Virus record (IMG/VR): IMGVR_UViG_3300035180_001778
Location: 286,470-350,469 of that record
Strand: one strand, 5' to 3'
Length of the DNA stretch: 64,000 nucleotides
The position numbers and the translations under genes are program-made. Shown piece after piece: positions 2,525 to 39,853 of the stretch. The notes beneath the pieces were generated by a model. That model was not told the origin of the DNA, made no database searches, and was given only the letters and a program-made list of their open reading frames with translations. Every line of letters starts with the position of its first letter. Positions within the stretch are counted from its first letter, which is position 1.

Positions 2525-2558
2525 AAGAAGGGAGTCTGAGAAATCAGGCTCCCTTCTT
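2525..2558. terminator. intrinsic terminator-like hairpin
   Basis: AAGAAGGGAGTCTGA-GAAA-TCAGGCTCCCTTCTT directly after the stop. Confidence 0.8.
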
Positions 2559-2565
2559 CATTTCC

Positions 2566-2594
2566 GGTTGATCGACAGCTACCCCAGTCTGTAG
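2566..2594 (+). promoter_or_regulatory. promoter for tRNA-like RNA
   Basis: GGTTGATC-N16-TGTAG; RNA 5' G is 8 nt after TGTA. Confidence 0.85.
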
Positions 2595-2601
2595 TCTCCT
2601 T

Positions 2602-2753
2602 GCTGAGACGGCGGAGGTAGCTGGAACGCCCTGGAGCCTGCGACTTTCCTCGGAAGACTTTGGAGTTGCCCGCGTCGGTGACGAGATTGTCTGACCTCGG
2701 AGGGGGACAGAGGACAGGCCAGCTACGAGGGTTCGATTCCCTCTCTCAGTGCC
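2602..2753 (+). ncRNA. tRNA-like RNA with anticodon loop replaced by an ~80-nt structured insert
   Basis: Acceptor GCTGAGA/TCTCAGT; D-arm GCG/CGC with GG; T-arm GAGGG-TTCGATT-CCCTC; stem CTGG/CCAG; 3' G-CC then T-tract. Confidence 0.75.
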
Positions 2754-2837
2754 TTTTTCGGGATGCCTCGATCACCAACCCCTCGGTGAAGCCATCCTTC
2801 TGATTCTGATTCCCACCCATGCCACTCGGAGATCGAT

Positions 2838-3050
2838 ATGGACCAGCCTTGTACGATTATCATCCCCTGGGAGCCCGACGTCTGCATCCGCACCGTCTGG
2901 CATCCCAAGGCACCCACGGGCACCTTCAGCACCCTCAGCCGAGGGCACTTCGACACCAAGGCGGAAGCCCAGACTTGGGCGGATAGGCACCTCGGCCCCA
3001 AGGCGACCTACACGATCGTGAACATCGCCGACCTGCCCGGAACTCGCTGA
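2838..3050 (+). CDS. hypothetical protein
   Basis: 70-aa ORF with phage-like codon usage. Confidence 0.6.
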   Translation: MDQPCTIIIPWEPDVCIRTVWHPKAPTGTFSTLSRGHFDTKAEAQTWADRHLGPKATYTIVNIADLPGTR

Positions 3051-3057
3051 GGATGCC

Positions 3058-3303
3058 GTGAGCAAAGCGAACGGCGGTACGAAGAAGAGACGGTGGGCGA
3101 ACATGAAGCACGCCCACGAGATGCGTTGGGCATGTCCAGGGTGTGGGGGGAGCGTACACACTCCCCGCCAGCCCGTGTATGGCCCCTACTCCAGGAAGCT
3201 TGTGGAAGCTGAAATCCCATACCTTCCCTGGGGAAGCCCCTGCGCTGCTTGTATTCGAGCGTGGGGTGGACGACACCGCCGCCGCCGCCGCCCCACGCGC
3301 TGA
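3058..3303 (+). CDS. hypothetical protein (CxxC)
   Basis: 81-aa ORF filling the gap before the convergent dcd. Confidence 0.4.
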   Translation: MSKANGGTKKRRWANMKHAHEMRWACPGCGGSVHTPRQPVYGPYSRKLVEAEIPYLPWGSPCAACIRAWGGRHRRRRRPTR

Positions 3304-5919: not shown

Positions 5920-6132
5920 ATGGCAACGGAACACACGAACATTCTAGGCGGCTCGCGGGTTCTCCCCGTCAAAATCGCGACGGTGCTGAAGGCTCTGCTC
6001 CCATCCGAGCTTCAGCAGTTGAAAGACTACGTCGACTTCGTGGCCCAAGAGGCACACGAAGAAGGCTACGAAGAGGGAGTCAAGGCTGCCGAAGATCGGT
6101 CTTCGCGACCCTTGGTTGGCGAAGGGGACTGA
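5920..6132 (+). CDS. hypothetical protein
   Basis: 70-aa ORF MATEHTNIL…. Confidence 0.6.
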   Translation: MATEHTNILGGSRVLPVKIATVLKALLPSELQQLKDYVDFVAQEAHEEGYEEGVKAAEDRSSRPLVGEGD

Positions 6133-6133
6133 C

Positions 6134-6904
6134 ATGAAACGAACCCTGGTAATCGGAGACGTCCACGGGTGTCTCCACGAGCTGCAAGACCTCCTCCTCA
6201 AATTGGGGTACACCCAAGGGGAGGATCGTCTCGTTTTCCTCGGCGACTTGATCGACAAGGGGCCGGATCCCGTTGGCGTGGTCAAGCTCGCTCGCCTGCT
6301 CAAGGCGGAGTGTATCCTCGGCAACCACGAGGAGTCAGCACTCCGGTGGCGTCGTCATGAGGCTCGCTGCCTCAAGGACCCGAAGTACAAGAACCCGATG
6401 AGAGAAATCTCGGATGAACTGCGAGAGCAGTGGTCCGGCCTCTCAGAGGAAGATGACGCCTGGCTGCGAAGTCTGCCGCTCACCCTGGATCTCGGGAACG
6501 ATATCGTCGCGGTTCACGCGGGCTTTCTTCCTGGTCTGTCGATCGTCGAGCAGCCGGCAGACAAGATCCTGCGTCTTCGCTGGGTCGATGCCGCCGGGAA
6601 GATGGTCCCGCTCCAGGAAGACACCATGGCGGCTCCCGAAGGAGCCCGCGAATGGATGGGCGCCTGGGATGGGAACCACCACGTCATCTATGGGCACGCA
6701 GTACACAGCCTGGAGGTGCCGAAGCTCGTCACAACCGCACATGGGTACGAGACGATCGGAATCGATACGGGCTGTGTTTTTGGGGGGCACCTGACCGCTG
6801 CGGTTGTCGACAAACCCAAAGGGGAATCGGCGCGAATCACCCTCGTCCAGGTGAAAGCCCGGCGAGCGTACCGTGAAGTCCCCCCCGGGACCTTCAACCC
6901 GTAG
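6134..6904 (+). CDS. metallophosphoesterase (PrpA/ApaH/PrpE-like)
   Basis: GDVHG, GDLIDKG, GNHE, HAG, GH, GIDTGC motifs. Confidence 0.9.
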   Translation: MKRTLVIGDVHGCLHELQDLLLKLGYTQGEDRLVFLGDLIDKGPDPVGVVKLARLLKAECILGNHEESALRWRRHEARCLKDPKYKNPMREISDELREQWSGLSEEDDAWLRSLPLTLDLGNDIVAVHAGFLPGLSIVEQPADKILRLRWVDAAGKMVPLQEDTMAAPEGAREWMGAWDGNHHVIYGHAVHSLEVPKLVTTAHGYETIGIDTGCVFGGHLTAAVVDKPKGESARITLVQVKARRAYREVPPGTFNP

Positions 6905-8213: not shown

Positions 8214-8426
8214 CTACTCAAGATCGTCGAGGAGATGCTCCCAGCCGGTCGGTCTCTTGTCCGCCAGCTCTTGGAGCATCCCGATCTGGAATTCTTTCGC
8301 TTCTTCCTTCGTGATGTTTCCACTGGCGTACTCGTACTCGACGCAGGGACACGAGCGGAACATGATCCGCCCGTTGCAAACGGGGCAGCGGACGGGAGGG
8401 CAATTCTTCCGTCCGTCTCGCATCAT
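8214..8426 (-). CDS. Cys-rich small protein with W-tail
   Basis: CPVC..CPC; ATGA overlap with upstream gene; ends RPTGWEHLLDDLE. Confidence 0.75.
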   Translation of the reverse strand: MMRDGRKNCPPVRCPVCNGRIMFRSCPCVEYEYASGNITKEEAKEFQIGMLQELADKRPTGWEHLLDDLE

Positions 8427-39222: not shown

Positions 39223-39462
39223 TCAACCTTCGGACAACCCGTGGATCTCTTGCCCCATCCGACAGCCTTCGGGGTTGAGGCAGCTGGGGCAGTTCCCGTA
39301 CTTGGGAAGGTCGACGTACCCGCATCCGATGCAGACATGGTCGAGCAGCTCTTCGATGAAGAGCGCGACATGCTCGGGGGGCCACCCTCGCAGCTTGGAC
39401 ATGAGCAGAAGAACTTCGTCCTTCACTTCCCCTTCGGTCGGGATGAGCTTGTCTTCAGGCAT
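39223..39462 (-). CDS. Zn-ribbon small protein
   Basis: CIGCG…CPSC. Confidence 0.7.
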   Translation of the reverse strand: MPEDKLIPTEGEVKDEVLLLMSKLRGWPPEHVALFIEELLDHVCIGCGYVDLPKYGNCPSCLNPEGCRMGQEIHGLSEG

Positions 39463-39853
39463 TTTTCAGGTTTCCGATCGTGGTGTGGAAGCACTCCGCC
39501 CCATCCGGAGGCTTCGTGTACCAGTCCGAAGGGCTGAGTCCCAGCCATACTCGGATCCCTTGGAGCTGAGGGGAGTAGACGTTGAGCCAGTAGTAGACCT
39601 CTCCGACTTGCACCTCGGGGTCGTACTCGAATGGGATGGTCTTCCCTGCCAGGGACATGGAGCGAAACGAGAACGCCCCTTCGGCCCGCACGACCGTGAT
39701 ATGGGGCGCGAACCTCTGCTTGTTGAGCCTGATACTTTTGGGCGTCAGAGCCCTTGCCAGGGCGGTGATCTCGGGGTCTACAAGCAACACCAAGCGAGAC
39801 GTCCCGTCGAGCGAGATGCTGATTTCGATGGTGCCTTCGCTCTGGATCAGCAC
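39455..39853 (-). CDS. 2H phosphoesterase
   Basis: Two HxT motifs about 70 aa apart: PHITVV and FHTTIG. Confidence 0.75.
   Translation of the reverse strand: MLIQSEGTIEISISLDGTSRLVLLVDPEITALARALTPKSIRLNKQRFAPHITVVRAEGAFSFRSMSLAGKTIPFEYDPEVQVGEVYYWLNVYSPQLQGIRVWLGLSPSDWYTKPPDGAECFHTTIGNLKNA

What the first reader, a model, noticed from the sequence alone, without database searches (positions are those of the whole stretch)
2602..2753. tRNA-shaped RNA whose anticodon loop is replaced by a three-hairpin domain
Seen: a 7-bp acceptor stem (G1-U72), D-arm with GG, canonical T-arm and 4-nt variable loop. The anticodon stem CTGG/CCAG continues through an AG bulge into CCTG/CAGG. It encloses about 75 nt with possible helices CGACTT/GAGTTG, CGTC/GACG and TGTCT/GGACA. 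The RNA sits between its own promoter and a T-tract, with its 5' G at the position where ATGs usually lie. There is no U33 and no splice that restores a normal loop. Inference: a tRNA-elbow mimic, such as a decoy for anticodon nucleases or synthetases, or a Ro/Y-RNA-like scaffold.
Basis: partly seen in the sequence, partly recalled or inferred. Interest (0 to 1): 0.85.

Follow-up and report, generated by a model that had tools for sequence, protein, structure and literature searches.

The report
Orphan tRNA-derived RNA gene in jumbo phage
A 350-kb phage carries, behind one of its own promoters, a 152-base gene with the top half of a serine-type tRNA but about 100 bases of unrelated sequence where the anticodon should be; it is real and tRNA-derived, but it occurs only in this phage, so its role (decoy RNA, mRNA leader or broken tRNA) is open.

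Summary
The core observation holds. Bases 2602-2753 (+) have a 7-bp acceptor stem flush with a canonical T-arm. That arrangement occurs only here and at the real tRNA, and never in 100 shuffled windows. The 5' G lies 7 nt after a phage promoter motif found 21 times (0 expected), exactly where leaderless ATGs lie.

The body is a class II tRNA. Its acceptor and D region match tRNA-Ser/Leu/Tyr, and its discriminator G73 matches Ser.

The three-hairpin model scores -28.6 kcal/mol against an MFE of -58.6, and its helices have about zero pair probability. An 8-bp helix (GUAGCUGG/CCAGCUAC) competes with the D-arm and the short "anticodon stem". That alternative gives a minihelix plus one long rod. 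The rod is no more stable than shuffled sequence.

ARAGORN (with or without introns, and for tmRNA) and Rfam do not call the element. No single splice restores a tRNA.

The element is an orphan. It is identical in all same-phage contigs. It is missing from a close relative (L059), where the same promoter drives the downstream ORF directly, and from more distant relatives. Pattern scans of IMG/VR and of metagenome contigs found no homolog, so covariation cannot be tested.

Best guess: an expressed, non-decoding tRNA-derived RNA, possibly a decoy. A decaying tRNA gene is nearly as likely.

The parts
2526..2563 (+). Hairpin plus T-rich tail ending the upstream ArdC/M78-like gene (1631-2524). It isolates the element from upstream transcription.
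   Evidence: Read from sequence. A local Rfam hit of a terminator-like stem covers 2492-2560. The gene was identified.
2568..2594 (+). Phage promoter motif TTGATC-N15-CTGTAG
   Evidence: 21 exact copies in the window against 0 in 100 shuffles. In the other copies it is followed at 7-10 nt by an ATG.
2602..2753 (+). tRNA-derived RNA gene, from G1 to C75. The predicted 5' end is the transcription start.
   Evidence: Identical in contigs from three JGI metagenome samples and one Logan sequencing run.
2602..2608 (+). Acceptor stem 5' strand. It pairs with 2744-2750 (7 bp, G1-U72).
   Evidence: Pair probability 0.85-0.99.
2609..2630 (+). Class II-type D region: C8 G9, GCG/CGC stem, 13-nt loop. It is homologous to the D-arm of tRNA-Ser/Leu/Tyr, but its folding is doubtful.
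   Evidence: Best matches among tRNAs with the same acceptor are all class II. Phage tRNA-Leu tops. D-stem probability is about 0.
2617..2726 (+). Long irregular hairpin ('rod') in the thermodynamic model. Its base helix is 2617-2624/2719-2726, followed by 2630-2633/2715-2718, 2644-2649/2699-2704 and 2655-2658/2689-2692, with an apical helix 2665-2670/2677-2682.
   Evidence: Its stability is not above shuffles.
2727..2743 (+). T-arm: 5-bp stem and loop TTCGATT
   Evidence: Pair probability 0.98.
2744..2758 (+). Acceptor 3' strand, discriminator G73, CC, then T5
   Evidence: G73 matches tRNA-Ser; Leu and Tyr have A.
2759..2837 (+). Spacer with GGAG (2828-2831) placed 6 nt before the ATG. It contains no promoter motif.
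2838..3050 (+). 70-aa ORF, probably co-transcribed. Its homolog in L059 is leaderless, directly behind the same promoter.
   Evidence: It belongs to a widespread small phage domain of unknown function.

Best explanation
The element is a transcribed, non-decoding RNA made from a class II (serine-type) tRNA gene.

Shown. It has its own copy of the phage's standard promoter, with G1 at the predicted start site. It keeps an intact acceptor/T-arm minihelix with G73-CC. About 100 nt lie where the anticodon and variable arms should be, and no usable anticodon arm is evident. The arrangement promoter, then tRNA-like gene, then SD, then small ORF is the same as for the phage's real tRNA(UCA).

Inferred. 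The tRNA top half makes the transcript a substrate for the host's tRNA 3'-end and CCA machinery and protects it from decay, as in engineered 'tRNA scaffolds'. The long arm leaves the core next to the T-arm, like the long variable arm of tRNA-Ser or helix 2 of tmRNA. Such an RNA cannot decode. It can still be bound by proteins that read only the top half plus a long arm: SerRS, the CCA-adding and RNA-repair nucleotidyltransferases, or MenT/AbiEii-type toxins that block tRNA-Ser. The most likely role is therefore a decoy or sponge in the tRNA-centred conflict with the host. It would be expressed with the early, variable accessory genes next to an anti-restriction (ArdC-like) gene.
For: The tRNA-type architecture is far beyond chance. 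The promoter and its spacing are confirmed. A strong upstream terminator isolates the unit. The body is class II and the discriminator is G as in Ser. The real tRNA at 15692 has the same promoter-tRNA-SD-ORF layout and no encoded CCA. The acceptor and T-arm are intact, with pair probabilities up to 0.99. The window encodes RNA-repair functions: an RlaP-family and a weak 2H-type match, plus an unlocalised PHROG RNA-ligase hit. It also encodes PTH2 and an ArdC-like protein, so tRNA damage matters to this phage (PMC7824862). MenT3 needs the acceptor-T stack and the long variable arm of tRNA-Ser, while shortening the anticodon stem matters little (PMC11162799). Patchy presence among close relatives is typical of accessory early genes. 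Other long tRNA-like genes missed by ARAGORN and Rfam exist in other large phages.
Against: There is no homolog anywhere, hence no conservation or covariation. The element is absent from the closest relative L059. The insert folds no better than shuffled sequence. U8 is replaced by C8 and the D-arm is doubtful. There are no expression data. The host and any target protein are unknown. No SerRS, SmpB, Ro or MenT-like partner was seen in the window. The decoy mechanism rests only on analogy.
Confidence: 0.33

Rival explanations
1. A decaying tRNA gene. A class II tRNA gene was acquired between the promoter and the small ORF. Its anticodon/variable region was then disrupted by an insertion or rearrangement. 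It is still transcribed but has no function.
For: It is a singleton, absent from L059 and from more distant relatives. The insert has no excess stability. It contains short direct repeats: CCTCGGA x2, GACTTT x2 and GGACAG x2. It has C8, an aberrant D-loop and G1-U72. tRNA finders reject it.
Against: The acceptor stem, T-arm and T-loop are flawless and G1 is placed exactly at the start site. The sequence is identical in contigs from three JGI metagenome samples and one Logan run. Large phage genomes tend to lose dead DNA. The D-loop change creates a perfect 8-bp pairing with the segment before the T-arm, although that is not significant on its own.
Confidence: 0.3
2. A cis-acting 5' leader of the ORF70 mRNA. 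The tRNA-like fold serves as a processing and stability module: RNase Z/E-type cleavage would release an SD-led mRNA. It could also act as a partial terminator that tunes expression of ORF70.
For: There is no promoter motif between the element and ORF70. T5 is a weak terminator. In L059 the same promoter drives the homologous ORF without a leader, whereas here the ORF has gained a GGAG SD. The same layout occurs at tRNA(UCA)-ORF 15778.
Against: Nothing indicates that ORF70 needs such control. The ORF70 family member fetched from a further phage (L223) has no such leader; P0124's contig could not be read. A 152-nt tRNA mimic is elaborate for a processing signal. This role is compatible with the main explanation rather than exclusive of it.
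Confidence: 0.17
3. A real decoding tRNA of unusual build. One version is a tRNA with a giant variable arm and the anticodon hairpin GGAGC-CUGCGAC-UUUCC (2633-2649; anticodon GCG, with U33 and A37). The other is a tRNA whose roughly 50-60-nt insert is removed by an unknown, possibly phage-encoded, cleavage and ligation pathway.
For: A 7-nt loop with U33 and R37 exists at 2638-2644. At a relaxed threshold ARAGORN offers tRNA-Gln(CUG) with a 52-nt intron and a long variable arm. The phage has RNA-repair genes: RlaP and a weak 2H match located, an RNA-ligase PHROG hit not located. The L006 phage has tRNA-like genes with about 60-nt extra arms and good anticodon loops.
Against: The candidate stems have only 4 of 5 pairs including G-U, and similar hairpins occur throughout the element. 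That model is 14.5 kcal/mol worse than the MFE. Default ARAGORN with introns finds nothing. The deletion scan gives 16 mutually inconsistent anticodon calls. No bacterial mechanism is known that splices a 32/33 intron of this size; this point is from established knowledge and was not tested.
Confidence: 0.08
4. A miniature tmRNA-like or Y-RNA-like ribonucleoprotein RNA.
For: The MFE topology equals that of a tmRNA tRNA-like domain: acceptor, 8-nt single strand, a long helix abutting the T-arm, then the T-arm. The best local Rfam hit is to the tmRNA T-arm. Short frames ending in UGA can be read in the rod.
Against: There is no G3-U70 (it is U3-A70). ARAGORN tmRNA mode finds nothing even at 80% threshold. 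Rfam matches 18 nt only. There are no pseudoknots. No SmpB or TROVE was found among 90 ORFs. Y RNAs have the opposite connectivity.
Confidence: 0.04

Closest known systems
Class II tRNA-Ser (also Leu/Tyr), the likely ancestor
   Same: Acceptor GCUGAGA, the 8-15 segment YG-GCGG-AG, AACGC closing the D-arm, a 13-nt D-loop as in some tRNA-Ser, a canonical T-arm, and discriminator G73 as in Ser.
   Different: It has no credible anticodon arm. About 97 nt lie between the D region and the T-arm, against about 33-38 in a normal class II tRNA. It has C8 instead of U8 and G1-U72 instead of G1-C72. The spacing of the D-loop GG is non-canonical. ARAGORN and Rfam do not call it.
tRNA-like domain of tmRNA (RF00023)
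   Same: In the MFE fold there is an acceptor/T-arm minihelix, an unpaired D-loop analogue and one long helix entering next to the T-arm. Only the T-arm matches the model.
   Different: There is no G3-U70 alanine identity, no tag reading frame with a resume codon, and no pseudoknots. It is 152 nt against 260-430 nt. ARAGORN tmRNA search is negative.
Engineered tRNA scaffolds for expressing RNA in bacteria (Ponchon and Dardel; a later paper of that line is PMC3753655, seen only as a title and abstract opening that do not use the term 'tRNA scaffold' or describe the design)
   Same: The design principle: a tRNA body whose anticodon region is replaced by a foreign structured RNA. The idea that the body gives processing and stability is from memory of that work.
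   Different: This is an analogy only. The element here is natural and phage-encoded, has a class II body, and its payload has no known function.
Bacterial Y RNA YrlA with Ro/Rsr
   Same: A modular RNA combining a tRNA-like module with a helical module, linked in the literature to RNA repair systems of jumbo phages (PMC7824862).
   Different: In Y RNAs the 5' and 3' ends form the Ro-binding stem and the tRNA-like part is internal; here it is the reverse. There is no Rfam match and no TROVE protein in the window.
Non-canonical phage tRNA-like genes found here (L006 pair; gut-phage family L029/L033/L045/L088) and published allo-tRNAs (PMC5389517, title and abstract seen)
   Same: They are over-long tRNA-shaped genes in phage genomes that standard finders miss, with long extra arms.
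   Different: There is no sequence homology to the element. The L006 genes keep good anticodon hairpins and have paralogs with compensatory changes. Allo-tRNAs have 8/4 or 9/3 acceptor/T geometry, whereas this element is 7/5.

Membership tests
tRNA (RF00005) | Full cloverleaf scoring above the family threshold, or called by ARAGORN | tested here: not met
   No call by ARAGORN or by Rfam at gathering threshold. At E<=10 only an 18-nt T-arm match appears. The class II model R1 aligns only the acceptor and T parts, at 22.8 bits.
tRNA (RF00005) | Acceptor stem of 7 bp stacked on a 5-bp T-stem with a TΨC-type loop | tested here: met
tRNA (RF00005) | Anticodon arm: 5-bp stem and 7-nt loop with U33 and R37 | tested here: not met
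   Only 4-of-5-pair candidates exist, and similar ones occur all along the element. The best candidate model is 14.5 kcal/mol above the MFE.
Intron-containing tRNA | Removing one segment yields a single canonical tRNA | tested here: not met
   ARAGORN -i at default finds nothing. At 90% threshold it gives a poor Gln(CUG) model with an intron at 32/33. The deletion scan gives 122 calls with 16 different anticodon calls. The insert is far shorter than any group I intron (smallest about 200 nt, from established knowledge).
tmRNA (RF00023) | G3-U70 pair for alanylation | tested here: not met
   Positions 3 and 70 are U-A.
tmRNA (RF00023) | Tag reading frame and pseudoknots, detected by ARAGORN or Rfam | tested here: not met
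   ARAGORN -m is negative at 80% threshold. Rfam matches model positions 346-363 only.
Y RNA / YrlA | Ro-binding stem formed by the RNA ends; a neighbouring Ro (TROVE) gene | tested here: not met
   The ends form an acceptor stem. There is no Rfam hit and no TROVE among 90 window ORFs. The rest of the 350-kb genome was not examined.
Conserved structured ncRNA (any family) | Homologs with covarying base pairs | not testable with these tools
   No homolog was found in INPHARED, PLSDB, IMG/VR or metagenome contigs by BLAST or pattern scans, nor at syntenic loci of relatives. Pattern scans require exact anchors, so diverged copies could have been missed.
Independent sRNA gene | Own promoter and own terminator | tested here: inconclusive
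   The promoter is met. The terminator is weak: T5 lies 3 nt after the stem and is not called. The downstream ORF lacks a promoter.

The most novel reading that the evidence does not exclude
The element is a natural 'tRNA-scaffold' decoy. The phage makes a serine-tRNA top half carrying an over-long arm and no anticodon. This RNA soaks up a host defence enzyme that recognises class II tRNAs by their acceptor/T stack and long variable arm, for example an AbiEii/MenT-type nucleotidyltransferase. Alternatively it diverts SerRS or tRNA-repair enzymes, protecting translation during infection. It would be an RNA-only anti-defence factor of a kind not described so far.
Probability: 0.1. Interest if true: 0.8.

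Novelty: new variant of a known kind. Interest (0 to 1): 0.47.

Why it matters
Phage tRNAs are now known to counter tRNA-targeting defences, but the known cases are decoding tRNAs. A phage RNA that keeps only the recognition surface of a tRNA and replaces the decoding part would be a different solution, a pure mimic. It would also be a natural counterpart of the tRNA scaffolds used in biotechnology. This case, together with the two other over-long tRNA-like families seen in passing, shows that standard tRNA and Rfam scans miss a class of tRNA-derived genes in large phages. If instead it is a dead tRNA gene, it documents how tRNA genes are inserted between a promoter and a leaderless ORF in the variable early regions of such genomes.

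Tried and rejected
Homolog search. All of the following found nothing relevant:
- blastn against INPHARED phages and PLSDB plasmids.
- Exact and gapped pattern scans of IMG/VR: 3' half, D-loop plus T-loop at long range, promoter plus T-loop (31), D-loop plus T-loop at normal tRNA range (46-48), and 5' half. The last gave only coding-sequence hits.
- The one metagenome scan (64-67), where all hits were adjacent tRNAs.
- Syntenic loci of six relatives found through the ArdC-like neighbour.
- Relatives of ORF70 (84-86, 92-94).

The genome-contig scan (72-74) gave only normal tRNAs. It was used to type the body as class II/Ser-like.

Splicing. ARAGORN intron mode and an exhaustive deletion scan gave no unique solution.

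tmRNA and Y RNA readings were rejected on defining features.

An archaeal bulge-helix-bulge intron was considered. It was dropped because the only bulge is a 2-nt AG on the 5' strand with no partner bulge, and because the gene content is that of a bacteriophage.

Stop-codon recoding as context: the standard code fits, and TGA is the commonest stop.

A class II covariance model (75-78) could not place the insertion. It preferred a shorter local alignment that uses an internal GAGA as a pseudo-acceptor.

No paralog or antisense target of the insert exists in the window. ORF70 has no Pfam or PHROG annotation.

Full report
**Where the window comes from.** The window is part of a jumbo-phage contig, IMG/VR UViG_3300035180_001778 (350 kb), with a second copy of 235 kb. 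GC content is 60%. Gene content is phage-like: an ArdC-N/M78 anti-restriction-like protein, dCTP deaminase, endonuclease VII, HNH endonucleases, a clamp loader and an Srd-like anti-sigma factor. There are also RNA-repair proteins, namely RlaP, a 2H phosphoesterase, a metallophosphoesterase and an RNA-ligase PHROG, plus PTH2. The standard genetic code fits, and TGA is the commonest stop.

**The observation: what holds.**
- Bases 2602-2608 pair with 2744-2750 (7 bp, G1-U72).
- This stem is flush with a perfect 5-bp T-stem and a TTCGATT loop (2727-2743).
- After the stem come G, CC and T5.
- In the whole window this acceptor plus T-arm geometry occurs only here and at the real tRNA (15692-15764). 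It never occurred in 100 dinucleotide shuffles. The element is therefore tRNA-derived, not a chance look-alike.

**The promoter.** The motif TTGATC-N15-CTGTAG occurs 21 times against 0 expected. In the other copies an ATG follows at 7 nt (12 cases) or 8-10 nt, so the transcripts are leaderless or nearly so. In the element, G2602 follows at 7 nt. A strong hairpin with a T-rich tail (2526-2563) closes the upstream gene.

**What kind of tRNA it was.** I compared the two halves with 255 phage tRNAs. I also compared them with 120 genomic tRNAs that share the acceptor GCUGAGA.
- The best matches are all class II tRNAs (Ser, Leu, Tyr).
- The shared parts are the segment 8-15 (YG-GCGG-AG) and the AACGC closing the D-arm.
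- In that set Ser has discriminator G, while Leu and Tyr have A. The element has G.
- Deviations from the class II pattern: C8 for U8, U72 for C72, three extra bases in the 5' part of the D-loop, and none between GG and A21.

**The inner structure.**
The MFE is -58.6 kcal/mol.
- A cloverleaf-constrained fold reaches -49.0. A model with a candidate anticodon hairpin at 2633-2649 and a giant variable region reaches -44.1.
- In every case the insert becomes one long irregular hairpin, not three hairpins.
- The decisive feature is an 8-nt perfect complement between the D-loop (2617-2624) and the bases just before the T-arm (2719-2726).
- The resulting shape is a minihelix, an 8-nt single strand, and a rod that abuts the T-arm. 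This is the topology of a tmRNA tRNA-like domain. Equivalently, it is a class II tRNA that kept only its variable-arm position.

**Cautions on the structure.**
- Real tRNAs are often misfolded by such energy models.
- An 8-bp helix occurs in 20% of shuffles.
- Neither the RNA nor the rod is more stable than shuffled sequence: z = +0.27, and -0.94 and +0.49.
- The firm parts are therefore the acceptor stem and the T-arm. The rest is a model.

**Is it a tRNA, an intron-containing tRNA, a tmRNA or a Y RNA?**
- ARAGORN and Rfam do not call it.
- ARAGORN with introns finds nothing at default. At a relaxed threshold it gives a poor Gln(CUG) model with a 52-nt intron at 32/33.
- Deleting every possible internal segment gives 122 tRNA calls out of 3219, with 16 different anticodon calls. 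The body is good enough that almost anything passes, and no single solution stands out.
- tmRNA is excluded by U3-A70, the negative ARAGORN tmRNA search, and the 18-nt-only Rfam match.
- Y RNA/YrlA is not supported: no Rfam hit, opposite connectivity, and no TROVE domain among 90 ORFs.

**Comparative evidence.** The element is identical in all contigs of this phage, which come from three JGI metagenome samples and one Logan sequencing run.

The closest relative available is L059, whose ArdC-like protein falls in the same 90%-identity cluster. L059 lacks the element. There the same promoter is followed directly by the leaderless ATG of a 67-aa ORF. That ORF is 59% identical over 54 aligned residues to the window's 70-aa ORF 2838-3050.

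In the window, 236 nt (2602-2837) lie between the promoter and that ORF. They comprise the element, T5 and a spacer that supplies a GGAG Shine-Dalgarno site.

More distant relatives (47-61% ArdC identity: L051-L055) also lack it within 10 kb. All pattern and BLAST searches for homologs failed. The element is thus a lineage-specific gain, or possibly a mobile cassette, in a hypervariable early region.

**A parallel within the window.** The real tRNA(UCA) at 15692-15764 also sits directly behind a copy of the promoter. It lacks an encoded CCA and is followed by GGAG and a small ORF at 15778. The phage therefore uses the layout promoter, tRNA, SD, ORF twice. The element is handled like a tRNA gene: the host's tRNA 3'-end machinery would release it and leave an SD-led mRNA.

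**Most likely function.** I rate an expressed, non-decoding tRNA-derived RNA as the best single explanation (0.33).

Shown:
- its own promoter;
- an intact top half with G73-CC;
- no anticodon arm;
- a tRNA-like genomic layout.

Inferred:
- the top half provides processing, CCA addition and stability, as in engineered tRNA scaffolds;
- the long arm at the variable-arm position, with Ser-like features, makes it a possible ligand for proteins that read only those parts.

Published work shows that the toxin MenT3, a relative of the abortive-infection toxin AbiEii, needs the acceptor-T stack and the long variable arm of tRNA-Ser. The same work shows that shortening the anticodon stem matters little (PMC11162799). 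SerRS likewise ignores the anticodon; this is from established knowledge and was not tested here. Jumbo phages invest heavily in countering tRNA damage (PMC7824862). This phage carries RlaP-family and weak 2H-type matches and an RNA-ligase PHROG hit. A decoy or sponge role is therefore plausible, but it rests on analogy alone.

**Rival explanations.**
- A decaying tRNA gene (0.30). This is favoured by the singleton status, the unremarkable insert and the core deviations.
- A cis-acting leader or processing module for ORF70 (0.17). This is compatible with the main reading.
- An unusual decoding tRNA or an unknown intron (0.08).
- A tmRNA- or Y-RNA-like RNA (0.04).

**Verdict.** The element is a real, tRNA-derived and probably transcribed gene of unusual build. 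The functional idea survives only in modified form: a decoy for readers of the tRNA top half, not for anticodon nucleases and not for Ro. Interest is moderate. The design is uncommon and suggestive, but it is a single sequence with no conservation, no expression data and no excess structure.

Noticed in passing
window 15692-15764 (+), with promoter at about 15653-15681 and ORF 15778-16065: A canonical 73-nt tRNA with anticodon UCA (reads UGA) and no encoded CCA sits behind its own promoter copy and in front of an SD-led small ORF. Yet TGA is the phage's commonest stop codon (45 of 68) and the standard code fits. A PTH2-type peptidyl-tRNA hydrolase gene lies next to it (16065-16379, minus strand).
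   Followed up: partly
window, 21 sites, e.g. 2568, 4824, 11916, 14113, 28600, 30482, 62657 (+) and 892, 27648, 32478, 41945, 47072 (-): A highly conserved promoter-like motif (G)GTTGATC-N15-CTGTAG is followed at 7-10 nt by ATG, which implies mostly leaderless early transcripts. It occurs 21 times against 0 expected. The motif is shared with the related phage L054/L055.
   Followed up: yes
L006 7645-7775 and 7944-8074 (IMG/VR UViG_3300017971_000185, a 497-kb phage): Two tandem tRNA-like genes of about 130 nt. Each has a 7-bp acceptor, a 5-bp D-stem with a 4-nt loop, an anticodon-like hairpin (loops UUUUCCA and CUUACAC), a conserved extra arm of about 60 nt with compensatory changes in its apical helix, and a canonical T-arm. 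Each is followed by a normal tRNA. Neither is called by ARAGORN or Rfam.
   Followed up: partly
L006 8566-8658: Within the tRNA array of this 497-kb phage there is an Rfam match to bacterial small SRP RNA at 57.7 bits (gathering score 40).
   Followed up: no
L029 1643-1785, L033 9287-9429 (-), L048, L067, L073, L082; L045 2038-2168 (-), L069, L085; L088 978-1105 (-): A family of 128-143-nt tRNA-like RNAs, apparently in gut-associated phage contigs (only L088's record names human gut). Features: acceptor GGAGGUA, a long-range helix AUGCAG/CUGCAU enclosing a variable domain, an A-rich linker, T-arm GGCGG/CCGCU, and an ACCA end in most members. It has A3-U70, so it is not alanine-type. ARAGORN and Rfam do not call it.
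   Followed up: partly
window 8426-9673 (-), 6116-6901 (+), 39458-39853 (-), 62664-63827 (+): A set of RNA-repair-type genes: an RlaP-family nucleotidyltransferase, a metallophosphoesterase, a weak 2H-SAK phosphoesterase match, and a cytidylyltransferase-like domain. There is also a PHROG 'RNA ligase' hit whose ORF was not located.
   Followed up: partly
window 3058-3303 (+) compared with L059: A second stretch of about 250 nt is absent from the close relative L059. It contains an 81-aa GTG ORF with CxxC motifs that gene callers do not call. The whole ArdC-to-dCTP-deaminase interval is hypervariable among relatives.
   Followed up: partly
L057 (JGI 3300036715 contig of 7606 nt): This contig of the same phage ends at the base corresponding to window 2674, inside the element. 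This may reflect an assembly break caused by strain variation there.
   Followed up: no
L003 130-210 (IMG/VR UViG_3300047201_000085): An AT-rich phage tRNA array holds a tRNA(UAG) with the same acceptor and T-arm as the element (30 of 31 bases). It has an extended, bulged anticodon stem, and ARAGORN mis-sets its 5' end. The resemblance is probably convergent.
   Followed up: partly
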